DNA from: Antechinus flavipes
Lineage: Eukaryota
Assembly: GCF_016432865.1 (NCBI RefSeq)
Contig: NC_067398.1
Location: forward strand, 3,038,001 to 3,102,000
DNA: 64,000 nucleotides
Reading direction: 5' to 3'
How positions within the stretch are numbered: the stretch's first letter is position 1; each line of letters opens with the position of its first letter. A program made the position numbers and the translations under genes. Shown one piece after another: positions 3,321 to 64,000 of the stretch. The notes beneath the pieces are model-generated. The model was given only the letters and a program-made list of their open reading frames with translations. It was not told the DNA's origin and made no database searches.

Positions 3321-4278
3321 AGCTGACTGCTTCCCTTAGCCAAGGCGTGGTCATGTTGTGGGACCGCTTTAACCTCGGTCATTATCCTGTGTTAACTATG
3401 GCCGAGCCGGAGGACCCCAGGGCATTTTCAATTAGTAACATAATTTTTGGTATCTCTGAGGTGCCAGGCGCTGCTCTAGGCCCCTGAGAGGCGTGGCTAC
3501 AAGCTTCAAGGACACAGCCCAAATTGAGATTTGATGGCCAGGAAAAGCAGCCTAGCATTCCCGGGATAGTGATATTGGGTTCTGGTGGACGGTCACCCCC
3601 TTTCCAACAGTAATAGAAATAGCCATTTGGCCACTTTCCACCATTTTTTCACTCCAGAATATACCCACTCGTCCCTCATTCGTGTAAAAATTAAAGACCT
3701 GGGTCTTGGCTATCCTGCCGGACCCCCCTCAGGGGGCTCCCTGAGGGGAACAGGGTGAGTGGCCAGAGGAAGGAGAAGCAAAAATGAGCCGCAGGGACGC
3801 TCTGTCTGGGCGGTCACACCTATCCTTGAACAAGAAACCCCTTTAGACTGCTCCAGATCCCCAGTTAACCAGTCGTGAGGAAAGACAACAGGAGACGGGG
3901 GATCCCCAAAAGGCAGAGTCGCTTTTCCTTCGGGGGTCCTGAGCCCCGGGTGGTTGTAGAGGGGATGCTCTCCCGGTGGGAAGGTTTCCCTTCCCCGAAG
4001 GCTCGGCTGCCCTGCAGTTTTCCGACGCTGCTTTTTATTCCAGTCTCTAGGGAAGTCCCTCTAGTCCTAGATGTCATCTTTGCCAAGAGTTTCAAGTGAG
4101 GGACAGAGGGTGCAGCCTGATGGTCTTACAGGCCATCTCCAGACAAGGGGACCGACTGCTGGTGATCTGAAAAGCCAGATGAAGGCCGTGGGCTCTGAAA
4201 TCCCCTTAAACTTCAGACCGGACCTTGGATGCCCAGACCCCCCGCCTGATAACGGGCCCTTCTGCTTCCTTCTTCCAG

Positions 4279-4492
4279 GGCCTCATGCTAAACAACAACA
4301 AGTTAACCAAGATCCACCCCAAAGCCTTTCTGCCCGTCAAGAAGCTTCGAAGGCTCTACCTGTCCCACAACCTGCTCACCGAGATTCCCATAAACCTTCC
4401 CAAGTCATTGGCAGAACTCAGGATTCACGACAACAAAGTTAAGAAAATACAAAAGGGGACGTTCAAAGGAATGAATGCTTTACACGTCTTGG
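4279..4492 (+). CDS. ASPN: asporin internal coding exon (first ASPN exon in the window; upstream exons lie outside)
   Basis: ttccAG|GGC...TTG G|GTAAGT, 214 nt, phase 0/1. Encodes GLMLNNNKLTKIHPKAFL...KGMNALHVL, matching recalled asporin LRRs. Confidence 0.96.
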
Positions 4493-6257
4493 GTAAGTTC
4501 TTCCATATGTGAAAGAAACTCTTTAACTGTTACCAAATGTCAGATTCTTGACTTCGAAAATGGTCAAACGGGTGCCCAGACTGGTGTTTTTTATGGAAGA
4601 GACACTTTCTTCCAGTGATAAAGCAAGCTGATTAGGGCCAGCATTTTAAGCCCGGGGATCTGATGGACTTCTGATCCAAACAATAAGCGCCCGATTTTAT
4701 AGCCTCCAAAATCCCGCGAGGCTGGACAGCTTTCTCAGGGAACCTGAGGGAGACGCAGAACCCAGTGACAGTAAGAGCAGACTGGAGGGGCGGAAGGTGC
4801 CCAGGGCCCTTCATTCTCCACCAGACTTATCTCCAGCTTAATCGAACCACAAGCATCCAGCCATTTCTGGCTGCAGAGGAGAAGCCTGTAAAACGACCAA
4901 GGGCCTCCACCTTAAGTCGAGCAAGTTCTGCTTGTTTTTTTAAGGCAGAGTGAAAGGGAAAATGTCTGGAATCCATTTCCTAGACTGTTTATCTAATTTG
5001 TGAGAAAAAATTTGCTTATCCATGAATTAATTCAAAAAATATTTGCAGAGTAAAAAACAAATACAGAAACTTATTTGCAAAATACATCTGACTACTGGTT
5101 ATTTGTGCTTGTGCATTTGGGGCATCGCGCTTAAGCGTAGCCATGTGGCCACCCCCTCGTCCCTGGCTGCACATCAGGACCTGGCCGGGACCTCAGACGG
5201 GCCCCTCGCTTACTGGCATACAGAGGCATTGTTTAAAAAATCTGTTGCCTTTTTGTTGATGAAGATGAGGGTGGGAACTGACATCCTATCCCGAGCATCA
5301 AGTACACAGCAGGTGCTTAATCAAGGCTTGCTGATTGACCAGTAGCGGCTCTAAAGTCTGTAAAATTCTCCCTCCCCCTTATTTACATCACCAGTTGGAG
5401 CTCAGCTGCCAGGCCGAGCAGAATGCCTGTGGGAAAATCTCCTGGATCCTATTTTTACAAGCTCTCTCTAATTTTCATTGGAAAAGCATCGGGCCCCCTC
5501 TCAGACCCCAGGTTTGTGCTGCTCAGGATCAATGACTCGCACATTTCGGCTTATAGAACAAGGCTGGTGGTGACAGCCCTGGCAAAGATCGCCAAAACAA
5601 GATAGGGAATACCAGCATCGCCCAAGAGGCCGCTGGGCAGGCTGCGCTCGGGCCCCTCGGCCCTGGGCACCGGCCTGGCCCTTGGCGGTTCCACGCCCGG
5701 GCAGTGAGCCTGCACTTCAAGTGCTCGTTTTTAAGATTTTCATGTCAGTCAATCAACACGCATTTAATAAGCTCTTACCGCGGCCAGGCCCTGTGCCAGG
5801 GGCGAAGGAGGCAAAGGCGGGTCTCTGCTCTCCAGGTGCCCCAGGTGAATGGGGAGTACATTTTAAACCTGGTCCTGGGCTCAAAGATGCCATTAGCTCC
5901 ATTTGACAGATGAGGAGGGTCAGGGATTTATTTGCCCAAGGCTTCAGTACAGAAGAATCAAAGGCAGGCCAGAGCAGCCCCTTCCTCATCCCTAAAGGTA
6001 CACAATGGCATAAAGGCCCGGCTGCCAGCACTGCTCTCCGAGCCTGCATCAGAGCCCGAAGGACCATGGGAGAAGACGGTGTGGGGCAGAAGTCCCGAGG
6101 ACCGGGTCTGGGGCGTCTGAGCTGCCCCTGTGGGCCTCCCTGGCCAGGCTCGGGGAAGCCGGCCGAGTGGCCAGCAGAAGGGGCTCTGACGTGGGCCGGG
6201 GGGAGACCGGGGGCTCCCCTCCCAATTTCTGTTAATGAGGTGCTTTCTGCTTCCTAG

Positions 6258-11656: not shown

Positions 11657-11854
11657 GTGATCTTCCTCCATCACAACAACATCACCAGAGTCGGGGTCAA
11701 TGACTTCTGCCCCACAGTCGCGAAGAAGAAGAAATCCTTATACAGCGCCATCAGTCTATTCAATAACCCCGTGAAATACTGGGAGCTGCAGCCGGCCACC
11801 TTCCGCTGCGTCTTAAGCCGAATGAGCGTCCAGCTCGGGAACTTCCGGAAGTAG
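11657..11854 (+). CDS. ASPN: asporin terminal coding exon
   Basis: gaacAG|GTG ATC...AAG TAG, 198 nt. Encodes [19 protein letters not shown]...[18 protein letters not shown], with the class I SLRP C-terminal cysteine pair. Confidence 0.96.
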
Positions 11855-13159: not shown

Positions 13160-13335
13160 AATCACACACTCGTAACATATGCACGTGATTTACACATGCC
13201 AGGCGCAAAATGTCAGCTGTAGGTACCACGAGTGTCCCGTACCATGACACGCAGTGCACGGTGTACGGTACGTGGCACCCCGTGTGTAATGCGCGTCACA
13301 CATGTCACCATGTTCACCCACACGTGTGCTGTGCT
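13160..13335. repeat. alternating purine/pyrimidine (CA/TG/CG)-rich low-complexity tract
   Basis: Sequence such as cacacactcgtaacatatgcacgtg...gcgcgtcacacatgtc...cacacgtgtgc. Confidence 0.55.
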
Positions 13336-13899
13336 TGGAGGGCGTGTCCGGAGTGCCTGGCAGAGGCCTGGGGGCTCCCCTCCGCACGGCCCTGCAGGCA
13401 TGAGCACTGAGGGAAGGCCAGCGCTTCTAGCTGAGCTCTCGGGGGCTTGGGGGGTGGGGCTTGAGCCCCAGCTTTGCCCTTACTCCATGGGGAGGCGCCC
13501 TGTGCCCCCACACTTTGGGGCCCTCAATGTCTTCCTGAGAAATCAGGGGCTTAAGTTTCTTTCCCAGTATCCGTGTAAAACGCGGCCCGATCTGAATAAC
13601 GAGAATTCTGCTGCTCTGAAGTTTACGCTGTAATTTAAAAGCTAGAACTCTCATTCTGCAAAGGCAAGAGCAGAAGAAAGCTTTAACTCTGTGGGGTAAT
13701 AGACCTACAGTGGGTAAGGGACACTGCTTGGGGCAGGGCGGCCGGGGAGGCTTGTGGAAACGGAACTAAGCGCTGGGAGGGGGGGGCGCACACAGTAGGC
13801 GCCACATTAATGGTTCTGTTGTTCGGTTGTGCCTAACTCTTCACGCCCCCTTGGGGTTTCCTGGCAGTGACACTGGGTGACCGGCCACTTCCTTCTCCA

Positions 13900-13995
13900 G
13901 CTCATTTTATAGATGAGGAAACTGAGGAAACGAGAGACTTGTCCAGGGTCGAGCGGCTAATGAACCTCCCAAGTCAGGTTCAGCTGCAAAGATGA
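13900..13995 (-). mobile_element. MIR/CORE-SINE fragment leading into the CTCF array
   Basis: ctcattttatagatgaggaaactgagg...gacttgtccagggtc is a reverse-strand MIR core. Confidence 0.65.
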
Positions 13996-13997
13996 GC

Positions 13998-14285
13998 CCC
14001 GTGCTCTGCGCCCTCTGGTGGCCCCCATGAGCACTAACTATTGAGCCTTTCTGAATCCTGCCGTGTTCTGCGTCCCCTGGTGGCCCTCAAGAGCACTAAC
14101 TTTTGAGCCTTCTTGAATCTGGTCCCGTGCTCTGCGCCCCCTGGTGGCCCCCATGAGCACTAACTATTGAGACTTTCTGAACCCTGCCGTGTTCTGCGCC
14201 CCCTGGTGGCCCCCAGGAGCACGGACTATGAAGCCTTCCTGAATGCGGTCCCCGTGCTCAGCGCCCCCTGGCGGCCCCCAAGAGC
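13998..14285 (-). promoter_or_regulatory. tandem array of five CTCF core motifs (62/64-bp unit)
   Basis: GCG(C/T)CC(C/T)CTGG(T/C)GGCC begins at 14008, 14070, 14134, 14196 and 14260. The reverse complement is GGCCACCAGGGGGCGC, the canonical CTCF core. Confidence 0.8.
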
Positions 14286-14299
14286 GCTCTCTTCCCCAC

Positions 14300-14960
14300 A
14301 AGCAGGACACTCAGGGGCGACAGCATTGGCCCCCTCCCTCTGCGTTGGCTCTGGCCGTGCTCCGACACCCTTCCCCGCCACTTCTCTGAAGCTGGCGCAC
14401 CAGCGCCACCCCACGGCGCCAAAGGCCGCCTCGGAGCCGGGCGCTGGCGGACTCCCCGGCGCCTCCGAAGGCCCGGCCTCCAGTCGGAGGCGTGACCGGC
14501 AGGGCCCCGGGGAGAGCTCCGGCCGGCGTTTTGCAGGCGCCTTTCCGCCGCCGCTCTTTAACCTCCCTCCGTTTTCCTCAGGGTTCGAGGTCACCGAATA
14601 GAGCAAGGCCTCAGATGGCGGCCGGGCGGGGGGTGGGGCAGCAGGCGCGGCAAGTGCGGGAGGCGGCCGCAACCACCTCCCCGCAGGTGGGGCCCAGTGA
14701 GCGGGAGCTGCGTTGTCAGCAGGGGCTCCCCCGTATGAATGCCCAGAGGCTCTAGACGGGTAGGCGGGCGGGTGGGAGTGTCTACGCTAACCCGCAGGGG
14801 ACAACCAACAGGCCCGGCCGCCCAGATCTGCCAGATGAGTCCCATCCGTAACAAGTGCGGAAGCTCTGCCGCAGGGTTTTGCCAACTGGGCAGACGGAGG
14901 AAACCTGCTGGGCCGGAGGCGGGAGGCCCCGGGCAGCTTCGGGCGGAGAAGTGTCCAAAG
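14300..14960. promoter_or_regulatory. orphan CpG-island-like segment with a YY1-like motif
   Basis: Very dense CpG/GC sequence with no coding exon. CAGATGGCGGCC at 14612-14623. Confidence 0.5.
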
Positions 14961-17649
14961 GCCACCCGGCTGAGATTGGGTTTCAGCAGAGTTCATGGGG
15001 AGCCACTGAAGACTCTTAAGGAAAGGAGTGACCGATGGGACTTCTGATTAAGGAGGATGGGCACAGAAGCTGAATGGAGGAAGGCCTGGAAATGGGCCAG
15101 AATGGAAGGAGGGAGCCCAAGGAAGAGTGGCCGGCAATGGTGCAAGTGAGGGGTGATGAAGGGCTGCATAAGGGGGACGTATAGGACACAGAAGGAGACG
15201 CGCATGAGCACTTATTAGGCCCCCTCTCTTCCTGGGAGAACAAGCCCTTCCTGAGCATCTCCTGAGAGCCGGGCGCTGGCCGAGGCCCTTCCCGGATATT
15301 TCCTTTGGTCTTCACAATAACCCTGGGAGGCAGAGCTGTTCTCATCAGCGAAGGGAGGAAACTCGCACAGGAGGCCCCACATACATGCTGCCTGTCTCCT
15401 TCACCCTACTACGCCCCAGGTGCCGGTTAAGCCCCTTTTACCTCCTTCTGACTCCAAAGCCAATAGTTTATTCGTCCCATCCTGCCATTTTTCACAAGTC
15501 AGGATCTTTTAAAAAGCTGAAATGTCCCAAGCAACCCCAGGAGCCTTTGGACATAAAGCTCCGTCTGCAGCCAGAACTAAGGAGACTGAATGGAAGTCAC
15601 CGCATGCACTTTCTGGATTTTTCTTTTCCCCTTTTGCTCTGATTTTTCTTTCCCAACATGATTCATAAAGTAAAGCATATTAAAAAGAAATCGATTTACT
15701 AGGAAAGGGGGGAAGCTGAAATCCTCCCCACATATTAGACACTTGAGACTGAAAATGAATTCCCGGGTAAGAGCTGTTGACACGAAGCCAGAGGCGTAGC
15801 CCTCCGCAGCCTGGCGGGCCCCCAGCCCTGGAGAGCCGGTGACGAGAAGTTTTCATCTTCTCGTACCAAGAGAAGAAACTTGAAGTTTTGGGGGGCAAGT
15901 CCCCACGGGGGCTGAGAGAACTACTGAATGTTGGCCAGAGGGGGGCAGCCATGCCCCAGAATCCTTAGGGAGGGAGAGGGGAGGGAAGAGGAAAAGCCCT
16001 GGGAGAGGAGCCAGAGGGGCCATCTGCCCCTCCCTCCCTCCTCTGCCGAAGGGGAGGGCCTTGGCCCATCCCCCACCCCGTGGCTCTCTGCGGCACCCTG
16101 AGGCTGGCAAATGTCCCATCACTTCACACATACTACTATTGTCCCCACTTTATAGATGAGAAAATTGAGGTAGAGATTCCGGGGCCACGGTCGGAGTCCC
16201 ACAGACATAGGGAGTGTCAGCCTGGGTGCTCTGTCCACCCCAAGGCCCCTGACCCAAACTCCCATTGAAGAGACGAGGTAAGTGAAGCTCAAGCAGGGTT
16301 CCAAGGTCAGTGGGCAGCCAGGGCCTCTACGGTGGAGCGCCCACCCTGGGAGTCATGGGAGGGGGCCCGTCCGGTGGCTACTTTGCTGGCCAGATCTGTG
16401 ACCAGAAGCCCCAGAACCAACAAAGAGCCGTTCTGGTCTGGAGGTTAAGAGCCAGTGGGTGACAGACATTTTGGAGAGAAAGTCCAGAGGAACTGGCCGG
16501 GCAGGGGCGGCCCCACCCCTGCCGTGAGAAGCTCCCCGCTGTTCCCGTCCCCTCCCCACGAGAAGGTTTCGGTCAGTTCCCTTTAGGGTGATGTCATCTC
16601 TTACACGTACTCCTAAACATGTTCCTCGCCATCCACCCCGCGGCCTAAATGGGGTTCTCGTGCCATATGGGATGCCATGGCTCCATAAGAGAATTCATTC
16701 CCCGTGCTTGACCCCGGTCGGTTTAAAGCAGCTTCTAGGCCAGACATCTGGCTCAGAAGTTGGGAGTCCGGGGCGTCCCCTCTGAAAGTTCACTGCCCAG
16801 AGATGTTTCTTATCTTCCATTTCCTGGAAGCTGAGCTCCTCAGTATTTCCCACTGGCTGCTCAAGGTTACTGAGGAACGGAATTTTAACTGTTTGCTGGA
16901 AACTTAACCCCTGTCTGCCCGAGTCCCCAGAGCCATCAGGCCTCTATTCTCCAGACCCGAGCAATAAGTGGCCGCTTCTCAAGCTCCCGAAGTTCTGTGA
17001 ACCAAGCCACGCCGCAGGATCAGATCTGGTCCATTTGAAATTTACTAGCCAGTCGGCCAGAGATTCGCCGTTATCTTAGCAGAAATAAAGTTTAAATATC
17101 ATTCAAAACAAAGGGAAAAGGCAGTGAGAGGTGGACTGTGTGAATCTCTCTCATGAGAAGCTGGTTTATTTGAACACTTCCCAACCAAACAACCCTCACA
17201 AGTCTTCTCGCCCCAAGTTTGTCAGCACCCACTAAGACTACCGCTGCTCAAGGACTTATTTTTGCTGCCATGTGTCCTTTTCTTGGGCCTTCACCTCAAA
17301 AGCACCTCTGCGTCCCTCCTTTGCTTTTTGGGGTAATCCCCTTCCTATCTTCCCAAAAGAAAAAAGAAAAATCAGTCCTTACCATAAAGACCCAGCCAAA
17401 GTAGACCCCTTAAAGGCTCTGGGGGTCCACCGGCCTCCCTGAGCCGCCCAAGCTCAGGACTGGTCTTGATCTTTGGGGGCCTCTTGGCAGCTTTGCCACT
17501 GCCAGGGCCTTTTTCCTGAGTAGCCTTTCCTCAATTTTCCCAGCTGGATCTGCAGCCAGAACACACCCACCCTGCACATGGCCCCCGGGGCTCTGTCTGG
17601 GACCTCAACCCTACTTCTTCCATTGTTTTTCATCGACTCCCAGAATTCC

Positions 17650-24104: not shown

Positions 24105-25041
24105 ATGAGTTTTCTCGGTCGACTCTGGATCATTTTCTGCTTTCTCGAAGTCACCGTGTATTGTCAGTACGCCATGTACCAGATGGACGAAGACTACGAC
24201 GAAGAGGCCGACGACGAATATTCACCCGCGTTTTATTTTCACTCCAATCAAGATTACGACATTTCCTCTCACCGAAATCCCCTCGGCTGTGCCGCGGAAT
24301 GCTTCTGCCCCCTGACCTTTCCGTCCGCCATGTACTGTGACAACCGCAAGCTCAAGACGATCCCAAAGATCCCGACGCACATCGAACAGCTCTACCTCCA
24401 GTTCAATGAAATAGAAGCCGTGACGGCCCATCCGTTTGCCAACGCTTCCAACCTGAAGGAAATCAACCTCGGCCACAACAAGATCAAGTCTCACAAGATC
24501 GAACGCGGCGTGTTTGCCAAGCTTTCCAATCTCTTACAACTGCATCTGGAGCATAACGACATGGAAGATTTCCCATCTCCTCTTCCTAGTTCTTTAGAAA
24601 AACTTCTTCTTGGTTACAACGAGATCTCTAGAGTGGAGGCGAATGCCATCGAAGGCCTGATGAACCTAACCACGCTGGACCTCTGCCACAATCGGCTTCA
24701 AGACTCTTCCTTAAGAGAAAACTTTTCCCAAATGAGCAAACTGGCGCAACTCAACTTAGGTAGTAACAGATTAGAGTCGATGCCCCCGGACTTACCTTCC
24801 TCGCTCATGCATCTCTCTCTAGAAAATAATTCCATCTCTCTCATCCCGGACAATTACTTCCAAAGGTTCCCCAAGCTTCTCGCTCTAAGAATGTCGTCCA
24901 ACAACCTGCGGGAGGTTCCCTATGACGTTTTTAACATTTCCAGCCTCATAGAGCTCAACGTGGGACACAACAATCTGAAGCAAGCGTTCTACATCCCGAG
25001 AAGCCTGCAACATCTGTACATGGAAGACAATGACATCGAAT
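24105..25041 (+). CDS. OMD: osteomodulin (osteoadherin) first coding exon
   Basis: Acceptor cattAG|gcacaagaacATG (exon starts 24095) and donor GAA T|GTACGT. 937 coding nt encode a signal peptide, a Tyr/Asp-rich N-terminus, the [23 protein letters not shown] class II SLRP cysteine cluster and LRRs. Confidence 0.96.
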
Positions 25042-25482
25042 GTACGTAAACCTTGTCTTTTTACGGAGGGGCTCAGGGTGGGCTGACAGTGAATGAGCTC
25101 TGATCCTCACGCACAGCTGTTGATAGGACCTGGGCGGGGAGAGGCTGAAATTATGTGCAACCAGAACAGCTCCTGCCTAGAAGTAAAAACAAGGATTCTT
25201 TCTGCTAAATGGCACTCTCCTCTATAGACGGCTTAAGCTTGCCGAAATCCTGTCGCTACTTAACTTTCCTTTCTCTGATTCCTCTGAAAGACAATTAAAC
25301 CGTGACTTCTGCAAGGGCTCGCCGTAGCCGGTATAGACGCCGCTAACTCCTTCCTGACTGCGGCGGTCCAAGCGTCACTCCCTGGGGGAAGCATTTAAGC
25401 ATGACCCCAGATATGTCCTTAGATGGGTTCTTAGTGACAACCAAGGCCTTCTGGATGCTAACTCTCTATTTTTACTTTACAG

Positions 25483-32772: not shown

Positions 32773-34713
32773 GTAAGTGAATTACATTTCTGTGAATCCT
32801 AACTCAGACAGAAAGGGGCATTTCTATGTCGAGAGCAGAAGAGAAGGCTCCGTGTGAGACCGAGAGGCTCCGCGGGCACGGCCCGCTTGGTTTGTTTTTA
32901 AACTTTCCGCAGGCGCTCCTCCCGAACCTTCAGCACTCAGGACAGTGCCTGGCACAGGGCGGGCCGCGGGGCCGCCAATGGCGTTTATAGGTGACTGTGT
33001 TAGGAGAAATGGCGGCAAAAGTGGGCAGAACCAGGAGAGCCACGTATACGATGATCACCACAACCTAAAGACAAACAGTTTTTTTCACTCACTCTTCTGC
33101 GTGCAGCCACTGGCCCCGGAGAGGGGCTGGGATGAAGCGCGCCGCCATGCTCTGATGGCCCAGCAATAAATGCAGGGCTCGGGCCGAAACACACGCCCGG
33201 GTCCGCGTCTGTGTTTGGGGGTGACACGGCCAGTGTGGGCGCTTGTTTGGCTTGTCTGTGTGTATCTGTTCAAGGCCGTTGTCTTTTCTTTATCCCCCAA
33301 TGGGAAGGAGGGAAGGAAAGTAGGAGGGAAAGGGGAAAAAAATTCATTGAAAAGAAATTTAGTTTAAAAAACTCTGTCCAACATTTGAAAACCTGTAGAC
33401 ATGATGCCCGGTGAACGCGACGCCCCGTGAACGCCTTTCTATTCTTTTCTGTGGATGTTTTTAAAAGAACTATCCTGGCCTTTATTTGCCATCATACTGC
33501 TAACCCTCCTCCTGTCTTCCACCCCACTCCCACTGAGGGAAAGCAAAGAAACAGCCAAACAAAATGAAACAAGGTCTTGGAAAAGCGAGTGGGATCGCTG
33601 TCCTCAGCGCCCATCACTCTCAAGGGGGAAGAGGCGAGCAGCCTCTGTCCCACGTCTGTGTGCTCATGCGTCACCAGAATCGAAGATTTTCCAAAATGGG
33701 GGCGGGGGGACCTGCCGTCCTCCCCGTTTCCTCCAGGCGGCATTTTCTTCCTTCCACATTTCCCTCCTTTCCACACTAGGAGAGCCTGCTTTCTATGCCC
33801 CTTCTCTTTCCAAACCGATCCACTGAGAACCTGGCTCCCAGAAGCGCCCATAGCCCTCCCTGATTCACCAGGGGTCTTCTGGAAGCTCCCCGGGCTGCCC
33901 GCTTTGGTGCTAGCTAGTGGTCCACTCAGACTTTCCTCTCTGCTCACAAGTGGAAGGGCATCTCGGACCAAGACTTTATGGCTTCTTTCTTGTCCCTGTT
34001 GCCTCCGGACCAGAGTCCCTTCCTCAGGCTCTTCCTCCTCCACTCTCCAGCCCTGTCATACCCTTCCTCAGAAGCCTTCGTTCCTTTCTTCCTTCCTCCA
34101 AGATACACCGCCAACATCTACAGCCAGCGTTGAAGGCCCTCTGAGGTCCGGCTTCGGCCAGACCCTCCAGTGAAGCTGTGGTTTCCTACCCCCCTCAACG
34201 TTCCAACTGGATGGGGCCCTTGGCCGGCCCCCAAATTTGTATTACCACCTCCCGGCCCTGGGATGAGACCCCTCCTGAGCCCAACATTACAGACCCTCTC
34301 ATCCTTCAGGGCTCAGCTTTGGGGCCGAGAACTGGGCAGGGCTAAGTGATTTCTCCCTCTCTGATTGGTTCTCTCCTCTGCTCTGATGATCCCAGTCGGC
34401 AGCAGGCGTAACCCTTCATCCCCCTTGTCTCCCTGGGGCCTGGACGGTTAGCATAAGCGGGTCCTATCGGAACCTGGTGACTTAATTTCTTGTGACTCAG
34501 TTTCCACATCATGAGAGCACCAAGCTGAGCCAGAGCAGGTGACAAAGAAAGGCTCGATCTCATTTCCTTAGCTGCAGAACAGGTGACTTGGACAATGTGG
34601 CTGCTAAAGGAGTCTACCTCTGTGCTTTTAAATGGTCGTGAAATAGCGCTAGTTTAAGATGAAATAAAATATAATATTTATCAATATTTTTATATGGGGT
34701 TCTTTCCCTCAAG

Positions 34714-34916
34714 CTAACTTAAGAAGGCTCGATTTCACCGGAAACCTGATAGAAGACATAGAGGACGGGGCCTTTTCCAGGCTCTCCCTGCTTGAGGAAC
34801 TCACGCTTGCAGAGAACCGGCTGTTAAAGCTTCCCATTCTGCCCGCTAAGCTGACTTTGTTTAATGCCAGACACAACAAGCTCAAAAGCAAAGGCATCAA
34901 AGCAAACACGTTCAAG
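34714..34916 (+). CDS. OGN: osteoglycin coding exon
   Basis: cctcaAG|CT AAC TTA...TTC AAG|GTAAGG, 203 nt. Encodes [29 protein letters not shown]...GIKANTFK. Confidence 0.96.
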
Positions 34917-35583
34917 GTAAGGGACATCCTTATAACAACTGCTCCAAGGAAACCGACACTGGCCAGAGGGGAAGCCCCCGAGGTTGGTATGCTGTCAGTC
35001 AGCTGGGCTCTGATTGCCAGCTTGAGGGCCTTGGGCCTAGTGGCTGAAACAAGGCCTCTGTGCCCTTCTGACCAGTCCATCCACAGTTGGTCCTCCACAC
35101 CGCAATCCAGCTGGTACTGGTGCTGAAGCCCAGCTTTGTCTGACCACGCCACTCCTCCCACTCCTCTGTGGCTCCTCAGTGCCTCCAAGCCAGGGCCCAG
35201 AGGCCACTGAGAGCCCTTCCTTCGGGCCCCCTTTCCGGGCTGGCCACACAGGACTCTGCAGCAGGCAGAGAGCCTCCTGGCTCTCCCACATTCTGTCCCC
35301 TCTAGCCCACGTGACTTTGCCCAGCTGTCCCCCAACTCTAGAATGATAGAATCCCCGGTTCCCTTCCAAAGGCTGGGGGCTCAGGGTGCCTTCTGCAGAG
35401 CCTTTCCTGATGGCCCCCACCTCCCAAACTACCCTGAGCCAAGACCAATGGGAAAGAGCCCCAGCAAAGGAGCGCGAGGCCCTCGGGTGAGCCCCACCTG
35501 CCTCCTCCTCAGCGGCTCCCCCAGTTGCAGCTCCTAGTTAAGACCTCTAAGGAAGGTTAACCCAGAAGCCCTTCTTCCCCCAG

Positions 35584-35679
35584 AAGCTGAAGAACCTCTC
35601 CTTCCTCTATCTGGACCACAACGACCTGGATTCCGTGCCGCCGCATTTGCCTGAGAGCCTGAGAATCCTTCACCTTCAG
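35584..35679 (+). CDS. OGN: osteoglycin coding exon
   Basis: ccccAG|AAG CTG...CTT CAG|GTACGT, 96 nt. Encodes [32 protein letters not shown]. Confidence 0.96.
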
Positions 35680-35832
35680 GTACGTGGTGCTCTGGAACAC
35701 GCAGTTGGGCCTAACCCAAATTTATGCCGATGGGAATCACCTCATTCTTTGACCCCGAATGCAATCCCAGCAGCCCCCACATTGCCTGACCCTGCTAGGC
35801 CATAATACCTGCATTTGGCTGATTAACTGAGT

Positions 35833-35833
<1 letters not shown>

Positions 35834-35875
<42 letters not shown>
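35834..35875. repeat. (GT)21 microsatellite
   Basis: Perfect GT run in an OGN intron. Confidence 0.95.
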
Positions 35876-35876
<1 letters not shown>

Positions 35877-36578
35877 TGAATCTCCTTCCTTCCTTTCTCT
35901 TACCACCCTTCTTTCCTCTCTCCTTTCTCCCCTCCCTCTTTGTCTCCCCTCATAGACTCAGGGCTTAATCACTGCATTAACTCAAGGCCTCGAGTCCTTC
36001 CAAGTTGTTTCCTTGCCAGCGCTGCGGTCTTTTTATGAATTGTTAGTTCTGCCCTTCTCTCGGTCTTTTCCGTTTCCTCTGAAACTGCCCGTTCCATCGT
36101 TCCTTCCTCATAGCTCCTATCATTTCCTTACACTCACACACCGGCCTTGTTCAGTCTCCTTCCAATACAGAGCCAGACCCTTGGTTTGCAACCCGGTCGC
36201 TAACAAAAGACTTGCAGAAATGCCCGTTCCTTTGCTCTTTCTCTGACCTCTTTGGGACGTCCATACTAGAGTTTTCGAGCGGGGTCAGAGGTTCTGCTCA
36301 TTTCGGTGATTTCTCCAGTATGACCCCAAATTTGAGGCGCCTGGTCCATGTCTGAGGATGCCCCCAAACTCTACCTTGCAGAGGAAGGCTTTCCCCATTG
36401 CTTTATGGGTGGCTCAGACCAAGCCTGTCCAAGTCTTCCACCCCAGCCGGGGGCTTCCCGGGCTTGAACCACCCACCTTGCCCTGGACGAGCAAACATGG
36501 TACATTTAGGGAGGACGTTTGTCTTTCCACACTCAAGGACAACTGGGAGCTTCCTAACCTGTTTCTCTTGTGTCACAG

Positions 36579-36749
36579 TTTAACAACATAGCCGACATCA
36601 CGGATGATACATTCTGCAAGTCCAACGACACGCGCTACATCCGCAGCCGCGTGGATGAGATCAGAATGGAAGGCAACCCCATCCTCCTGGGGAAGCATCC
36701 CAACAGTTTCATCTGCCTAAAGAGACTGCCCACTGGAACCTACTATTAA
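36579..36749 (+). CDS. OGN: osteoglycin terminal coding exon
   Basis: tcacAG|TTT AAC AAC...TAT TAA, 171 nt. Encodes [22 protein letters not shown]...[17 protein letters not shown]. The six exons total 858 nt (285 aa). Confidence 0.96.
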
Positions 36750-39557: not shown

Positions 39558-40085
39558 CCAGAGATCATACACAGAGAACCTATCAAACATGGTGGGAGCC
39601 CAGAGATGTTCATAGGGAAGCTCCCCAATATAACAGGAGCTCAGAGATTGTACAGAGAGAAGCTCCCCAACATGGCGGGAGCTCAGAGATTGTACAGAGA
39701 GAAGCTCCCCACCATGGCGGGAGCCCAGAGAGTGTACAGAGAGAAGCTCCCCAACGTGGCGGGAGCCCAGAGATTGTACAGAGAGAGCTCCCCACCATGG
39801 CGGGAGCCCAGAGATTGTACAGAGAGAGCTCCCCACCGTGGCGGGAGCCCAGAGAGTGTACAGAGAGAAGCTCCCCAACGTGGCGGGAGCCCAGAGATTA
39901 TACAGAGAGAAGCTCCCCAACATGGCGGGAGCCCAGAGATGGTACAGAGAGAAGCTCCCCACCGTGGCGAGAGCCCAGAGATGATACAGAGAGAAGCTCC
40001 CACCGTGGCGGGAGCCCAGAGATGGTACAGAGAAAAGCTCCCAAAGTGGTGGGAGCCCAGTGATAGTATGCAGAGGGAACCTCAC
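39558..40085. repeat. 41-42-bp minisatellite, about 12.5 copies
   Basis: Consensus ccagagattgtacagagagaagctccccaacatggcgggagc. Units start at 39558, 39600, 39641, 39683, 39725, 39767, 39808, 39849, 39891, 39933, 39975, 40016 and 40057. Confidence 0.95.
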
Positions 40086-45930: not shown

Positions 45931-46078
45931 AAGAGACAGAGACTCACAGAGAGACAAAGAGAGACAGACAGGGAGACAGGGAGACAGAGAGACAGAGAGA
46001 GACAGAGAGAGAAAGAGACAGAGAGAGAGAGAGAGAGACAGAGACAAGAGACAGAGATACACAGAGAGACAAAGAGAC
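45931..46078. repeat. (GA)/(GACA)-rich microsatellite running into an assembly gap
   Basis: agagacagagactcacagagagacaaagagagacag... continues up to the first N. Confidence 0.9.
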
Positions 46079-46356
46079 NNNNNNNNNNNNNNNNNNNNNN
46101 NNNNNNNNNNNNNNNNNNNNNNNNNNNNNNNNNNNNNNNNNNNNNNNNNNNNNNNNNNNNNNNNNNNNNNNNNNNNNNNNNNNNNNNNNNNNNNNNNNNN
46201 NNNNNNNNNNNNNNNNNNNNNNNNNNNNNNNNNNNNNNNNNNNNNNNNNNNNNNNNNNNNNNNNNNNNNNNNNNNNNNNNNNNNNNNNNNNNNNNNNNNN
46301 NNNNNNNNNNNNNNNNNNNNNNNNNNNNNNNNNNNNNNNNNNNNNNNNNNNNNNNN
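46079..46356. other. assembly gap (278 N)
   Basis: Run of n characters. Confidence 0.99.
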
Positions 46357-48056: not shown

Positions 48057-48111
48057 CTAAAGCAGAGAAGCCGTGCAAAGACCCTTTAACTGAACGCGGG
48101 ACCCGTTGGCA

Positions 48112-48290
48112 AGATCCCCAGCCCTCTCCCCCCCGAGCAGGATCCCCAGCAGGATCCTCAGCTCTCTCCCCCCCCAGCAGGATCCCCAGCCCTCTCCCCC
48201 CCAGCAGGATCCCCGGCCTTCCCCTCCCTGCAGGATCCCCAGCCCCCTCTCCCCCAGCAGGATCCCCAGCACTCCCCCCACCCCAGCAGA
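48112..48290. repeat. imperfect repeat of about 26 bp (caggatccccagccctctcccccc)
   Basis: ggatcc recurs about 7 times, separated by C-rich spacers. Confidence 0.8.
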
Positions 48291-51200
48291 ATCCCTGGCC
48301 CTTCCCAGGGGAATCATGACGAAGGATTCCGCCCTGAGAAGTGTGTAAAACGACGCGCTCAGAAACAAACGCCCTTCTCCACTCCCGCTCAGGTTGGGGA
48401 AGGGTCCGTCACTCAGTGCCCCGCAGACTGCGGGGCCTCCAGGGCAGGGACCCTCGGCGCTCGGCGCAACGCCTGCCAGTAGCAGAGAAAGGCTGTTTTG
48501 TTGGCCCGGGGAGCTCTCGGGCCGCCTGTTTGCTCTGCCCTGTCCCCCGCACACCCGGCCCGCCGCACACACTTGGCACCCCCTTCACCTCCCAAGCTCT
48601 TCTCGTCCCACAGAGCGACCTCCAACGCCCCCAGAACCACCTTGTGGCCCCCCGCCCCCGGCCCATCTCCCTGGGCCTACCTCCCCTCCAAGGAAGGAGG
48701 CCTTGACTGCTGGCGTCCAAGGCTCTGCCACGCCTCCCACATCCTTCCTGCCGAGCTCCTCTGACACCCCCCCCACTCTGAGACCCCCAGCCCTTTGCCA
48801 CTGGACACCGCCGGTAAGCTCCGGAACGCCCGTTGCTGCTTCCCCATCTCCCCTCCTAAGACCCGGCTCGGATCCCAATTGGGCACAAAGTCTTTCCAGA
48901 AACGGCCACTTTTGTCTCGGCCACGGGGGATAGCATCAGTAGGAAGCCGACCGCTGCTCCAGGAGAATAGAAAGTGGGAGAGAGACAACAGATGCGGTGC
49001 CGCCGTTCCCCAGTGCCGCTGTTCCCCGGTGCCACTGTTCCCTGGTGCCTTCCTCTGGGTCCCGATCCCTTAGCGCCGGGCGTCACACAGCAGGCGCTTA
49101 ATAAATGCTTTTGGACTGACTGTGTCAAAGTACGTTAGAGCTTCTCTTCTCAATCCAAAGTTCCCAGATCTCCCCGAGGGAAACCTGGTCGGTGCTTTTA
49201 AGCACTTCCTAGGGAGTAGCGGCCCCCCTTCTCTTAGGAAAGGTGCAAAAGGCAGAGGGTGACAGATGGCGAGGACCCCCCTCGGAGCAGAGCCTCCTGC
49301 CATTCCCAACACGGGGGTGGGGGGGACACCCGGGAGCAGCAGTTAAGGAGGGGCTCCAGCCTACAGTCTCTGCGGCCACCCGAGCTGCAGGACCGTCTGT
49401 TCGGGCCTAATAAGACAAAGCAGAACTTGTAGCTCCCCCTGGATCGTGTAACCAGACTTTGTCACATCATGAATCATTCTTGCTCAAGATTTCTGGAACC
49501 GTCCCTCCAGAATCCCTTGGGTGCTAGGGATCCATCCCGAGAGGCCGGCCGTCTCCTCGGACGACAAACCTGGCCTTTGTGTTAACGACAGATCAGTCCG
49601 ACTCGTTTCCGGCAGACCAGTGCCCAAGAGAGCTTTTCCTGGACCTTTGTTACCGGCCAAGCGGAGAGAGCTGATCAGCAAAGACCCCGGATTAGAACGG
49701 GCCCTGTCCCAAAGAAGAGGAAAAAGGGAGAAAAACGGCTAAAAAAGAAAACAGAACGAAACCACGGAAACAGGAATAATTACAGCTCTCCTCGGTAGAA
49801 CCCAGTTCGTGGAGTCCTTTAAAGATGCTCAAGAGGAATGTGAGAGAGAAAAAAGAAAAGGGAAATTCTCTGGGGTGGTTACCTTTTAAATGGACAAACT
49901 GTCTTCCCATGAGGGTCGCCTCTCCGGACCATCCCCCTGCAGCTCTGGCTGGGCCTGGCAGGGGCGAAGGCCGGCCTGGGCAGGGTCTCCTCCTCTGCCC
50001 TTGTCTCTCTCCCGGGCCCCGGGGGAGGGCAGGAACAGCCCTTCCAGGCAGGCACTCAACAAACCTGATGCCATGTGAGACCACGGTGTGAGAGCAGCTT
50101 CTTTCTCCTGGCCACGCTCAGGGATGGACGTTTGCCCCCGGCGACCCCTCCAGGTCTCGGAGGAAGCTCTTCTCGCTGCCTCTGAACATCACGCTCTCAC
50201 TTTTCTGATTTCCCTTCAAGCCCAAGGTCATCGAAGGCAGGCCTTCCTTCTCCCTGAAGCCGCGTCGCCGTCGAGTCGGAGCCTTTGGGGACGATGCCGG
50301 CTCCTGTTGCCACGGGGAGGATGCCGGACCTGGATGGCTCAGCTCTGCCGGACAACCTGTCTCTCCAACAGGTCACTCTGCCCGCTGAGGTCAGCCTCGC
50401 CCAGGCAGGGGCCTGAAGAGGAGCCCACTGGAAGCTTGTTCCCCTGCTCCCAGGGTGGAGAGGCCGGTGCTCGAAGCGGGGAGGATCGGCCAGGTGTGAG
50501 ACGCTCGTCGTGGCCCCTGGTCAGCAAGGCAGTTCTGGACCCAATGCCAGGGATGGCCTGAGGCGGGCCTTCGGCCCCGAGCCGCAGCCTTTGCAGTGAG
50601 GGGGCCGGGGCCGGCAAAGTCTGCCGCCGTGTGCCCACAAGAGGGGCCAGAGCCGGGCAGCAAGGACGTGATCCTTAGGTGCCCAGCCTGAGCTGCCCTG
50701 GAAGCCACAGAACACAGCAAGGAAACCCCGCAGAAAGCAGAGTTCCCCCTCCCCGCCACAGGCCCCCAGGCCTGCCTAACACAAAGTTTCAATTCAGGAA
50801 GTCGGGAGGACTGGCCACTCAAGGGGAACCTAAGTCAACGTGCCCTCACTAAGCCCCTATTATGTGCCAGGCACCCACTAAGTGCCGGGAATGAAACACG
50901 GCTGGTGAGCTTTAACTCAAACGCTCAGAGAATCGTCGTCTTGTGGCTCTGAGGCCTCCGGGGGCCCGGCTGGGTCTTGGGGGCTGTTCTGGGCCTGCTC
51001 AACGTTCAGAGACTGGGATGGGAGCAAACCCTCGCCATCATCCTCACCCCTATGGCTGCTGGGGGTGCCGCGACAGGGCAGACAGGAAGCCCGCCGGCCC
51101 CTCCCCACACCGCTGCCCACCACGAGTGCTGGCAAAAGTGAACTAAAGCCGCAGGGAGGTCTCCATGGGGGCCCCCAGCCACGGGGTCAGGGAGCCCGGG

Positions 51201-53415: not shown

Positions 53416-53655
53416 CAGGCGCTTCCTGTGATCAGCCCCGCCCCTCCTCCCCTGCCCCACACAGTAGGGCTTCCTGTGATCAGCCCCGCCCCTCCTCCCC
53501 TGCCGCACACAGTAGGGCTGCCTGTGATCCGCTCCGCCCCTCCTCCCCTCCTCCCCTGCCGCACACAGTAGGGCTTCCTGTGATCAGCCCCGCCCCTCCT
53601 CCCCTGCCCCACACAGTAGGGCTGCCTGTGATTAGCCCAGGCCCCACACACAGTG
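53416..53655. repeat. 48-bp VNTR, about 4.5 copies
   Basis: gcttcctgtgatcagccccgcccctcctcccctgccccacacagtagg; units start at 53421, 53469, 53517, 53573 and 53621. Confidence 0.92.
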
Positions 53656-54435
53656 GGTGCTTATTGCGCTTAGTCTAGGTGGCGTCCCGCAGACGTGCCC
53701 AGGGAAAAGCGGAAAGAGGGAGCGTGAAGAGGCCGTGGAGACGCCACAGCCCTGCAATCAGCGGGGCGAGACCCCTGGCCCGGAGCAGTCACCAAGCCAC
53801 CCCCAGGCCAAGGCGATGAGCACGGCGCCCTTGGGGCGCACTTGAGGCCGGCCTGTCAGACGGGCATCTGTGAAGCTGGCTCTGGTGCCACGCTCCCCAT
53901 GACACAGCCACGGGCTTGGGAGGGGGTCCTGCTCTGCCCTCCCCCAGCCACAAAGCCCTGGGGTCTTCTCAGGACGCCCCGCCCCCAGCCCTCCCCGCCC
54001 TCTGTGGGTGAGCTCCTATTTACTCAGACCACGGCTCGTCAGCCCCCGGCTCCGAGGGTTGTTTCCCCACCGGTCGCCGAGCAGGGCTGGCTCCTGCCCT
54101 TTTCCTCTCGCCGGGGCCCTCCTGGGCACACGACGGGCACCCGGTGACTACCAGCCTCTCTCCCAGGCTCGGCTGAGGCGGCTGCCTCTCACCCACGTGC
54201 CCCCGGACACTCACTGAGCCAGGAAACTTCCCGGAGGAGCCCAGCTGGCTTTCGGGAACCCCCCCTCCATCCCTTTTCCTCCCAGGGGCCCGGGAGCAGG
54301 GGCCGCCCCCCCAAGCGACGCCGGGTGTCTGAGCCGCGGCTGCCCAGGACTGGGTGAGGGAGCGGGCGTCTGAGGCACGGGTCAGAGCGAAGCCTCGGGA
54401 AACTGCCCGGGACCAGGGAAAACCAAGACGCTCAC

Positions 54436-54620
54436 TCCTCTGCATCCCCTCCGCGCTTCCCGGGAGCTCGGCTCTGGTCACGGAGTAATCGGTTATCCTG
54501 ATGCCGGTGACCTCAGAGAGGAAGGAGAGGCCGGATTCCAGGCGCTCAAGCTGGGCTTCCGAGGCCCTGGCAGGCTCCGCTCGGCCCGCGGGAGGCTGCT
54601 CGTCATCCTGGCAGAAACGT
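54436..54620 (-). CDS. CENPP: centromere protein P coding exon 2
   Basis: ttgcAG|A CGT TTC...AGG A|GTGAGC, 185 nt. Contains QLERLESGLSFLSEVTGIRITDYS (human QLGHLESELSFLSTLTGINIRNHS). Confidence 0.93.
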
Positions 54621-54719
54621 CTGCAATGGGGGGACGGTGAGTCAGAGGGAGAACTCGCTACCCGGCTCCTGCCCAGAGCCTCCCAAAACCCCGGACGTCG
54701 GGGCGCAGAGCAACCAGCA

Positions 54720-55095
54720 CGGCGCACGTGTGTGTGGCGCCGGCGTGAGCACAACTACAAGGTGCGCACACACACGTGTACCTGTGCATCGTGAGCATGG
54801 GAGCACCCGGGCGAGAACACGCATGTGTGTGAGCGCTTGTGTGCTCACAGCGTATATCTGTGTGCCGTGTGCATGCATGCGTGCCCCAGCACGAGAACAT
54901 GTATGTGTATGAAGGCTTGTGCGCTCGCAGTGTATACCTGTGTGCTGTGCATGTACATGTGTGCATGTGCATGTGAGCCAGTGCGAGAGCATGCATGTGT
55001 GTGTTATGCTCACAGTGTGTATCTGTGTGCCCCGCGCAGGTGTGTACGCGTGTAGCTGCATATCCCTGTCCGCATCCCTTTGCTGTGCACTGTGC
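54720..55095. repeat. TG/CA-rich alternating purine-pyrimidine tract
   Basis: About 370 bp of gtgtgc/atgtgt/gcatgc units in CENPP intron 1. Confidence 0.8.
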
Positions 55096-57891: not shown

Positions 57892-57910
57892 CCCCCCCCC
57901 CCCCCCCCCC
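57892..57910. repeat. C19 homopolymer
   Basis: 19 consecutive c just upstream of the branch-like CTAAC (57921-57925) of the NOL8 exon 2 acceptor. Confidence 0.9.
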
Positions 57911-57948
57911 GGTCGCGGCTCTAACCCGCTTTGTCCGCTCGCTCCCAG

Positions 57949-63401: not shown

Positions 63402-63895
63402 GTGAGTTTTATCGTTCCGCGGTTTTCCCCGCTGACAACCAGACAACGAGATTCTTACTGGAGGAGCCTCGCTTCATCCCCACGCCCCATCCGGAGATTT
63501 AGGGCCCCTCTCCCTCCTACCTCTGTCACCTTCCTCCCTCTTCCTGTTTCTGCCGACTTGTTCCTTGGAAGAGAAATGGATGGAAGGAATGACAGTCTTT
63601 GAGGGAGTGGAGCCGTCTGGGCAGAGGGTCAGACAGGGCAGGGGGCAGGACTGGGACGCAATTTCCTTTTGAGACAGCCCCCAGTGAGTATCAGGAGGGA
63701 GACACAAACCCGGCTCAGCTCGGCCCTCATGGAGCATCTTAGACAAAGGTGTAGACGGGGGCGGGGCGTGCGGCCTCGGGGCTTTCCCCTGAAATGGTCT
63801 TTTTCTTTCTGTAAATAGTATTTGTTTCTTTCCTTATTACGTGCAAAGGTGTTTTTAAAATTAATTTATTTCTTATTTTTAAATTTAATACGTTA

Positions 63896-64000
63896 GCGCC
63901 ACTAGGTGGCGCAGTGGATAGAGCATCAGCCCTCAAGTCAGGAGGACCTGAGTTCACATTTGCCCTCAGGCACTTAACACTTCCAGGCTGTATAACTCTG
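63896..64000 (+). mobile_element. marsupial tRNA-derived CORE-SINE 5' end (WSINE1/MAR1-like), cut by the window edge
   Basis: ctaggtggcgcagtggatagagc (A box)...caggaggacctgagttcac (B box)...cacttaacacttcc. Confidence 0.85.

What the first reader, a model, noticed from the sequence alone, without database searches (positions are those of the whole stretch)
13998..14285. Tandem array of five phased CTCF sites between ASPN and OMD, apparently amplified from a SINE head
Five near-consensus CTCF cores (GCGCCCCCTGGTGGCC type) sit in one orientation at spacings of 62, 64, 62 and 64 bp. Units 1 and 3 resemble each other, as do units 2 and 4, giving a 126-bp higher-order dimer. A period of about 63 bp is about 6 helical turns, so all sites would face the same side of the helix. 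The array directly continues a reverse-strand MIR core, and each unit (ttgagcc.ttctgaat..ccgtgctctgcgcc) resembles the reverse-complemented B-box/A-box head of a CORE-SINE. SINE-borne CTCF sites are known, including in opossum, but local tandem amplification into a super-anchor is unusual. All motifs are reverse-oriented, which predicts a strong boundary looping toward ASPN/ECM2 and separating tendon/ligament ASPN from bone-type OMD/OGN regulation inside the CENPP intron. Copy number may be polymorphic.
Basis: partly seen in the sequence, partly recalled or inferred. Interest (0 to 1): 0.8.

Follow-up and report, generated by a model that had tools for sequence, protein, structure and literature searches.

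The report
SINE-head minisatellite carrying five CTCF motifs
A short tandem repeat between the ASPN and OMD genes of a marsupial has multiplied the front end of an old SINE, which gives five strong, same-direction matches to the CTCF binding motif; this could be a chromatin-loop anchor, but binding has not been tested.

Summary
TRF finds a 4.6-copy array at 13998-14285, with period about 63 bp and a better 126-bp dimer. They rank 1, 2, 3, 5 and 8 among all CTCF matrix hits in the window.

The array lies about 1.1 kb past ASPN's likely poly(A) signal and 9.8 kb before OMD's ATG exon. It abuts the 5' end of a minus-strand Mar-1/MIR-type CORE-SINE. A young SINE head elsewhere in the window carries nearly the same word. 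The roughly 35-bp spacer shows no B-box or other SINE similarity above chance, so the origin claim is only half supported.

Assembled contigs from public sequencing runs of four related species show parts of the array. It has single-copy depth, so it is old, real and not a dispersed family at 80% identity or more. The cores vary less than the spacers, and every CpG is kept.

The window holds about nine minisatellites, so tandem duplication is common here. CTCF occupancy and insulation are untested. First readers of this scan noted other CTCF-motif minisatellites of 62-66 bp elsewhere in this genome; those notes are unchecked.

The parts
13998..14285 (-). Minisatellite of 4.6 units of 62-65 bp, arranged as 2.3 dimers of 126 bp. 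Each unit carries one CTCF-type core in canonical orientation on the minus strand.
   Evidence: TRF, unit alignment, contigs of four public runs
14006..14024 (-). CTCF-type 19-mer of unit 1, GGGCCACCAGAGGGCGCAG, 20.4 bits. It is also the head of the adjoining SINE.
14068..14086 (-). CTCF-type 19-mer of unit 2, GGGCCACCAGGGGACGCAG, 17.4 bits
14132..14150 (-). CTCF-type 19-mer of unit 3, GGGCCACCAGGGGGCGCAG, 21.1 bits
14194..14212 (-). CTCF-type 19-mer of unit 4, GGGCCACCAGGGGGCGCAG, 21.1 bits
14259..14277 (-). CTCF-type 19-mer of the partial unit 5, GGGCCGCCAGGGGGCGCTG, 19.4 bits
13808..14030 (-). Old Mar-1/MIR-type CORE-SINE. Its 5' head is unit 1 of the array. The CORE part is 13849-13970.
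   Evidence: Word depth is 1-2 million at 13849-13970 in four runs. The consensus of contig ends running off the match gives the family's flanking sequence. The head aligns collinearly to the native head at 63893-64000.
14262..14742 (.). CpG-island-like stretch (GC 72%, CpG observed/expected 0.76) touching the array's right edge
   Evidence: It is one of 21 such stretches in the window.
15932..15950 (+). Plus-strand CTCF-type match (16.2 bits), 1.7 kb to the right. Together with the array it forms a divergent (minus then plus) pair.
11690..11854 (+). ASPN last coding exon (...[18 protein letters not shown]...QLGNFRK, then stop). An ATTAAA signal lies at 12897. The exon start is approximate.
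24105..25049 (+). OMD main coding exon
63893..64000 (+). Young native SINE head, cut off by the window's end. It has a perfect A-box and its own CTCF-type word GCGCCACTAGGTGGCGCAG (18.6 bits). It was used as the natural comparator.

Best explanation
This is an old, single-locus minisatellite in the ASPN-OMD intergenic DNA of a marsupial. A segment of about 63 bp was duplicated in tandem. The segment contains the first roughly 28 nt of a minus-strand Mar-1/MIR-type CORE-SINE (the A-box end, GGGGCCACCAGGGGGCGCAGAGCACGG) plus about 35 nt of unresolved origin. That extra part is most simply the SINE's original 5' flank. The segment first became a dimer, and the 126-bp dimer was then duplicated again.

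Heads of this SINE family natively carry a strong CTCF-type word, so each unit inherited one. The result is five co-oriented minus-strand sites 62-65 bp apart.

Shown here: the array, the motif strength and orientation, contiguity with the SINE, single-copy status, presence in related species, and lower variability of the cores.

Inferred: that CTCF occupies one or more units (my estimate is about 0.6-0.7). Also inferred: that the cluster then stalls cohesin coming from the ASPN side, acting as the right-hand anchor of loops that run leftward and adding insulation between ASPN and OMD/OGN (about 0.3).
For: The array and its dimeric order are shown. There are five cores against 0.28 expected. 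They are the top PWM scores in the window, all on the minus strand.

The SINE CORE next to unit 1 has a word depth of 1-2 million, while the array has single-copy depth: 23-35 in X1 against 21-25 in the flanks.

Unit 1's core aligns collinearly with a native SINE head. The core matches 15 of 17 bases. The 151-bp stretch of unit 1 plus the SINE body is matched or beaten by 16 of 500 shuffles, and unit 3 alone by 6 of 500.

Contigs from organisms A, B, D and E cover parts of the array with 0-3 differences per roughly 92-156 bp. The word shares imply up to about 6% divergence among them.

The core 19-mers show 4 mismatches in 95 positions against the unit consensus, versus 30 in 195 for the rest of the unit (p 0.006). 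Both CpGs are intact in all five units. A CpG-island-like stretch adjoins the array.

In the relatives, the array plus this stretch shows 12 differences in 625 bp, versus 133 in 2823 bp for the flanks.

A plus-oriented site at 15932 gives the divergent pattern typical of boundaries. The published precedent is that opossum MAR1_Mdo SINEs carry the M1 motif and are bound by CTCF at hundreds of sites (PMC3368268). Tandem CTCF sites have been shown to act as insulators (PMC7087399).
Against: There are no ChIP, methylation or Hi-C data, so occupancy and insulation are pure inference.

The lower variability of the G+C-rich cores, and the CpG retention, could come from GC-biased gene conversion in this 56% GC window rather than from selection.

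The between-species comparison pools non-independent lineages and uses only contigs that passed an 80% filter.

The window holds about nine minisatellites, so a neutral tandem duplication that happened to include a SINE head is a sufficient explanation of the structure.

Only hundreds of the many opossum MAR1 copies are bound (PMC3368268).

The spacer's origin is unresolved. No contig spans the whole array, so copy number in the other runs is unknown.
Confidence: 0.6

Rival explanations
1. This is a neutral minisatellite with no CTCF role. Tandem duplication is frequent in this GC-rich, probably highly recombining region. One event happened to copy a SINE head. The motifs are inherited baggage and are either unoccupied (methylated or closed chromatin) or bound without consequence.
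For: The 64-kb window holds about nine separate minisatellites. A native SINE head already carries an 18.6-bit CTCF word, so no selection is needed to explain the motif. Core conservation and CpG retention can be produced by GC-biased gene conversion. There are 21 CpG-island-like stretches in the window. Only a minority of MAR1 copies are bound in opossum (PMC3368268).
Against: The words CCACCAGGGGGCGC and CCACCAGAGGGCGC are near-perfect consensus. The cores vary about 3.6 times less than the rest of the unit. The array plus the adjoining stretch shows roughly 2.5 times fewer differences than the flanks among relatives. All 10 ancestral CpGs are kept despite about 15-20% divergence between units.
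Confidence: 0.33
2. The whole unit, spacer included, is the reverse-complemented SINE head from the A-box through the B-box, with internal deletions. The array would then be an amplified SINE head and contain no flanking DNA.
For: Two of the four spacers contain GGACCAGATTCA, which resembles the native head's GGACCTGAGTTCA. First-reader notes report other CTCF-motif minisatellites of 62-66 bp in this genome. A recurring period would fit a unit defined by the SINE itself.
Against: The spacer's score against the native head equals the shuffle mean, and 246 of 500 shuffles reach it. The spacer shows no similarity above chance to this SINE's own post-core sequence. No B-box lies within 3 mismatches. 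The model needs deletions of about 7 and about 14 nt that the adjoining SINE copy itself lacks.
Confidence: 0.3
3. The array is one copy of a dispersed repeat: a satellite, or a SINE subfamily that carries a built-in tandem head and spread by retrotransposition.
For: Several similar-sounding arrays were noted elsewhere in this genome by first readers. These notes are unchecked.
Against: At 80% likeness or more the array has only single-copy word depth in four genomes, while the adjacent SINE CORE reaches 1-2 million. A profile of the unit finds nothing else in the window.
Confidence: 0.06
4. The array is a set of Pol III/TFIIIC sites (an 'extra TFIIIC' type insulator) made of tRNA-like promoter boxes.
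For: The units descend from a tRNA-derived SINE head.
Against: The A-box has at least 3 mismatches in every unit, and there is no B-box within 3 mismatches. ARAGORN and Rfam find nothing.
Confidence: 0.03

Closest known systems
SINE-borne CTCF sites: opossum MAR1_Mdo, rodent B2/B3, dog SINEC_Cf (Schmidt et al. 2012, PMC3368268)
   Same: The CTCF M1-type word sits in the head of a MIR-family marsupial SINE. Here the first unit is the head of such a SINE, and a young copy in the same window carries the word.
   Different: In the published cases the motif is spread by retrotransposition, one site per insertion. Here one insertion's head was multiplied in place by tandem duplication, giving five sites within 270 bp. 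Binding was not shown here.
Clustered or tandem CTCF sites at domain boundaries (Jia et al. 2020, PMC7087399; clustered-CTCF boundary studies such as PMC11344162)
   Same: Several co-oriented sites lie close together. A nearby opposite-oriented site gives a divergent pattern.
   Different: Known clusters are usually independent sites spread over kilobases. Here the sites are paralogous units 62-65 bp apart, close to the size of a CTCF footprint, so simultaneous occupancy of neighbouring units is uncertain.
CTCF-binding tandem repeats: DXZ4, ICCE, FIRRE, the tRNA VNTR at 1q23.3, and DXPas34 (PMC3491370, PMC6125249, PMC4041453; DXPas34 from my own knowledge)
   Same: A tandem repeat in which every unit carries a CTCF motif in one orientation.
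   Different: Those are macrosatellites with kb-scale units and tens to hundreds of copies, or X-inactivation-centre elements. This is a 0.29-kb autosomal minisatellite with 4.6 units, derived from a SINE head.

Membership tests
CTCF binding site (M1 core, JASPAR MA0139-type) | High-scoring match to the 19-bp core matrix | tested here: met
   The five sites score 17.4-21.1 bits out of a possible 26 and rank 1, 2, 3, 5 and 8 in the window. The exact-word test gives 5 found against 0.28 expected.
CTCF binding site (M1 core, JASPAR MA0139-type) | In vivo occupancy by CTCF or cohesin | not testable with these tools
   No ChIP-type run appeared among the nine runs returned.
CTCF binding site (M1 core, JASPAR MA0139-type) | Unmethylated CpG within the motif | tested here: inconclusive
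   Both CpGs are retained in all five units, and a CpG-island-like stretch adjoins the array. This fits germline hypomethylation, but GC-biased gene conversion could also explain it.
Mar-1/MIR CORE-SINE derivative | Contiguity with a CORE-SINE body of a high-copy family | tested here: met
   13849-13970 has a word depth of 1-2 million in four genomes. The consensus of contig ends running off the match gives the family's CORE and tail flanks.
Mar-1/MIR CORE-SINE derivative | The unit matches the A-box end of the SINE head | tested here: met
   GCCACCAGGGGGCGCAG matches the native head's GCCACTAGGTGGCGCAG at 15 of 17 positions, and 6 of 500 shuffles reach that score. Unit 1 continues collinearly into the SINE body. 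The strict A-box consensus itself is degraded, with at least 3 mismatches.
Mar-1/MIR CORE-SINE derivative | The unit matches the B-box part of the SINE head | tested here: not met
   The spacer's similarity to the native head is at the shuffle mean. There is no B-box within 3 mismatches and no similarity to this SINE's own body.
Minisatellite / VNTR | Head-to-tail units of 10-100 bp | tested here: met
   TRF reports period 62 x 4.6 copies and period 126 x 2.3 copies.
Minisatellite / VNTR | Copy number varies among individuals | tested here: inconclusive
   No contig spans the array, and no joints that skip or go back by 62 or 126 bp were reported. Organism E shows about four times the flank depth at 14215-14275, which may mean extra units.
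Clustered-CTCF domain boundary | Several sites, with divergent orientation across the boundary | tested here: met
   Five minus-strand sites at 14006-14277 are followed by a plus-strand site at 15932-15950.
Clustered-CTCF domain boundary | Insulation or loop anchoring in contact maps | not testable with these tools
   No Hi-C or Micro-C data are accessible here.
CTCF macrosatellite (DXZ4 / FIRRE / ICCE type) | Kilobase-scale units in tens to hundreds of copies | tested here: not met
   The unit is about 63 bp, in 4.6 copies.

The most novel reading that the evidence does not exclude
This genome, and its close relatives, may hold a recurrent class of small minisatellites made by in-place tandem amplification of Mar-1/MIR SINE heads. 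Each would create a multi-site, one-directional CTCF anchor. The ASPN-OMD array would be a bound, conserved member that separates the regulation of ASPN from that of OMD/OGN. That would be a second route, besides retrotransposition, by which SINEs build boundary elements.
Probability: 0.2. Interest if true: 0.6.

Novelty: new member of a known kind. Interest (0 to 1): 0.38.

Why it matters
Suppose CTCF binds here. The locus would then show that a single SINE insertion can be turned into a multi-site, directional loop anchor by ordinary minisatellite expansion. That would add a local-amplification route to the known spread of CTCF sites by retrotransposition.

It would also give a compact natural test case for how closely spaced CTCF sites (62-65 bp) share occupancy and stall cohesin. 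The test case would sit between two tissue-specific SLRP genes (the small leucine-rich proteoglycan family that includes ASPN, OMD and OGN). These genes lie only about 12 kb apart here.

If CTCF does not bind, this is one more neutral minisatellite in a repeat-prone, GC-rich region.

Tried and rejected
1. Dispersed-family idea. I laid contigs from four genomes on the locus at 80% likeness or more. The array has single-copy depth while the neighbouring SINE CORE reaches millions, so this idea is rejected at that similarity level.

2. Other copies of the unit in the window. nhmmer with a unit profile, and blastn-short with the spacers, found only the core of the young SINE head (E 0.43).

3. Origin of the spacer. 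I ran local alignments with dinucleotide shuffles against the native SINE head, this SINE's own body, and both flanks on both strands. None was above chance.

4. More native SINE heads for comparison. The three other old SINE fragments in the window (near 6799, 9257 and 46614) have no recognisable head.

5. RNA genes. Rfam at a permissive E-value and ARAGORN found nothing meaningful.

6. Pol III boxes. These are degraded or absent.

7. ChIP evidence. There was no ChIP-type library, so occupancy could not be examined.

8. Literature. Full-text searches found SINE-borne CTCF sites, tandem CTCF insulators and CTCF macrosatellites, but no description of SINE-head minisatellites in marsupials.

9. 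SINE consensus sequences. I did not type MAR1 or MIR consensus sequences from memory into the tools. The family name rests on the contig-end consensus and on my recollection of the Mar-1 tail.

Full report
**What is there.** The sequence at 13998-14285 is a tandem repeat. TRF scores it as 4.6 copies of a 62-bp unit (80% matches) and, better, as 2.3 copies of a 126-bp unit (88% matches).
- Phased on the cores, the units are 62, 64, 62 and 65 bp long, followed by a partial fifth unit.
- U1 and U3 are 93.5% identical and U2 and U4 are 81.5%. The other pairs of full units are 77-80%.
- The dimeric higher order is therefore real. It implies two steps: an old duplication to a dimer, then a later duplication of the dimer.

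**The motifs.** GCGCCCCCTGGTGGCC, with at most one mismatch, occurs five times in the window. All five are in the array, at 14008, 14070, 14134, 14196 and 14261.
- Dinucleotide shuffles give 0.28 expected matches, and none of 100 shuffles reaches 5.
- The last spacing is 65 bp, not 64.
The five 19-mers score 17.4-21.1 bits and all lie on the minus strand.
- They rank 1, 2, 3, 5 and 8 of all positions on both strands of the window.

**Genomic setting.**
- OMD's main coding exon is 24105-25049 on the + strand (LRRNT plus LRR domains; osteomodulin 5yq5 at E 2e-133).
- Asporin-type exons lie on the + strand at 4210-4509, 6239 onward and 10827 onward. The last coding exon ends at 11851, and an ATTAAA signal lies at 12897.
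- Osteoglycin-type exons lie at 34668-36746.
- The order on the + strand is therefore ASPN, array, OMD, OGN. The array lies about 1.1 kb beyond ASPN's likely poly(A) signal and 9.8 kb before OMD's ATG exon.
- I did not test the CENPP-intron placement.
- The window is unusually GC-rich at 56%.
- It also holds about nine separate minisatellites, so local tandem duplication is common in this stretch.

**Origin.** Immediately to the left of the array, on the minus strand, lies a SINE.
- When contigs from four public runs are laid on 13300-15100 at 80% likeness or more, the 13849-13970 part collects a word depth of 1-2 million.
- Contig ends that run off this match give a consensus of ...GTTTTCTTGGCAAAGATACTGGAGTGGTTTGCCAT on one side and CAAACAGGGTTAAGTGACTTGCCCAGGGTC... 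on the other.
- From my own knowledge, that is the CORE and RTE-like tail of the marsupial Mar-1/MAR1 branch of the MIR family.
- Read on the minus strand, unit 1's core runs collinearly into this SINE body.
- A young native copy of a SINE head lies at 63893-64000 on the + strand. It has a perfect A-box and carries GCCACTAGGTGGCGCAG where the units carry GCCACCAGGGGGCGCAG. That is 15 of 17 matches, and 6 of 500 shuffles reach that score.
- The alignment of unit 1 plus the SINE body to the native head extends to the GACCTGAGTT region at the expected distance, apart from a 7-nt deletion.
- So the core plus AGCACGG is the A-box end of a SINE head. This native head already scores 18.6 bits on the CTCF matrix. 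That agrees with the published finding that opossum MAR1_Mdo SINEs carry the CTCF M1 motif and are bound at hundreds of sites (PMC3368268).

**The rest of the unit.** The remaining roughly 35 nt are another matter.
- Their similarity to the native head is exactly at the shuffle mean (246 of 500 shuffles reach it).
- They do not resemble this SINE's own post-core sequence or either flank, on either strand.
- No B-box consensus lies within three mismatches, and the A-box is degraded in every unit.
- The simplest model is duplication of a segment that spans the SINE's first roughly 28 nt plus about 35 nt of its 5' flank. An all-SINE unit with internal deletions is not excluded.

**Single locus, and old.**
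- At 80% likeness or more the array has only single-copy depth. In X1 it is 23-35 against 21-25 in the flanks. A profile of the unit finds nothing else in the window. It is therefore not a copy of an abundant dispersed repeat.
- The nine runs returned come from five related organisms. Their shares of the sampled 31-mers imply roughly 2.5%, 3.7% and 6.2% divergence for B, D and E.
- Organism A: contigs cover 14016-14171 with 0 differences and 14142-14642 with 3 differences.
- Organism B: a contig covers 14016-14170 with 1 difference, which lies in a spacer.
- Organism D: a contig covers 14152-14529 with 8 differences.
- Organism E: contigs cover 14131-14222 with 3 differences, and about 14217-14277 joined to 14312.
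- The array thus predates the split of these species and is not an assembly artefact.
- No contig spans the whole array and no unit-sized joints were reported, so copy number and polymorphism remain open.
- Organism E has about four times the flank depth at 14215-14275, which could mean extra units.

**Hints of constraint.**
- Across the paralogous units, the 19-mer cores show 4 mismatches in 95 positions against the unit consensus. The rest of the unit shows 30 in 195 (Fisher p 0.006).
- Both ancestral CpGs are intact in all five units.
- The array touches a CpG-island-like stretch at 14262-14742 (GC 72%, observed/expected 0.76). However, 21 such stretches exist in the window.
- Among the relatives, the array plus that stretch shows 12 differences in 625 bp, against 133 in 2823 bp in the flanks (pooled p 0.0009).
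- That comparison is not over independent lineages, and it uses only contigs that passed the likeness filter.
- All of this fits a germline-unmethylated, possibly occupied element.
- GC-biased gene conversion in a GC-rich, minisatellite-rich region would push in the same direction, so I treat these points as suggestive only.

**Likely mechanism.**
- If CTCF binds, minus-strand motifs act under the convergent rule (established knowledge) as right-hand anchors of loops that extend to lower coordinates, towards ASPN.
- A plus-strand match at 15932-15950 (16.2 bits) lies 1.7 kb to the right. It gives the minus-then-plus divergent pattern typical of boundaries.
- Tandem CTCF sites are known to strengthen insulation (PMC7087399).
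- With 62-65 bp between cores, neighbouring units lie about one CTCF footprint apart, so full simultaneous occupancy is uncertain.
- The helical-phasing point follows automatically from tandem duplication, and the period varies by 3 bp.
- My estimates: at least one unit bound, 0.6-0.7; a measurable boundary between ASPN and OMD/OGN, about 0.3.
- No ChIP-type run was available, so none of this is shown.

**Comparison with what is known, and novelty.**
- SINE-borne CTCF sites are published, including in opossum (PMC3368268).
- Tandem or clustered CTCF insulators are published (PMC7087399, PMC11344162).
- CTCF-binding tandem repeats are published: DXZ4, ICCE and the 1q23.3 tRNA VNTR (PMC3491370, PMC6125249, PMC4041453).
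- This locus combines them on a small scale: a 0.29-kb minisatellite made from one SINE head.
- My full-text searches found no description of such SINE-head minisatellites.
- First readers of this scan noted several other co-oriented CTCF-motif minisatellites of 62-66 bp elsewhere in the same genome. None of these notes has been checked. My depth test shows only that they are not 80% or more similar to this array.
- A genome-wide census would decide whether this is a recurrent class.
- As it stands, I file this as a new member of a known kind. It is real and tidy, but its function is untested and its formation is unsurprising in this repeat-prone region.

Noticed in passing
window 39558-40068: A 42-bp minisatellite of 12.3 copies (88% matches) with a 208-bp higher order. 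It lies downstream of the OGN exons. The unit is CCAGAGATTGTACAGAGAGAAGCTCCCCAACATGGCGGGAGC.
   Followed up: no
window 28395-57411 (several places): The window is rich in minisatellites: 28395 (29 bp x 3), 31249 (34 bp x 3.1), 48109-48306 (27/53 bp), 53421-53638 (48/104 bp), 55490 (51 bp) and 57106-57411 (13-104 bp). Together with 56% GC, this suggests a highly recombining, perhaps subtelomeric, region.
   Followed up: partly
window 63893-64000: A young SINE head on the + strand, right after an A/T-rich stretch and cut off by the window's end. It has a perfect A-box, TGGCGCAGTGG, and its own CTCF-type word scoring 18.6 bits.
   Followed up: partly
window 4210-36746: The ASPN 3' exons, OMD and OGN all lie on the + strand within about 33 kb. 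This is far more compact than I recall for the human cluster.
   Followed up: partly
window 14614-14686: Inside the CpG-island-like stretch there is an ATGGCGGCC start context followed by an open frame that ends at CAG|GTGGGG, which looks like a 5' splice site. It could be the first exon of an unannotated + strand transcript, or it could be chance.
   Followed up: no
window 14278-14528: Organism E (run X9) lacks 14278-14311 (34 bp), just past the array. In place of 14450-14528 it has 42 other letters. The CpG-rich stretch is therefore not strictly conserved.
   Followed up: no
window 54288-58115: A cluster of CpG-island-like stretches with GC up to 72%. By synteny recalled from human, this could be the NOL8/CENPP bidirectional promoter region. 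Strong CTCF-type matches lie at 52089 (-) and 59111 (+).
   Followed up: no
window 45932-46356: An AG-rich microsatellite or low-complexity array runs directly into the only N run (46079-46356).
   Followed up: no
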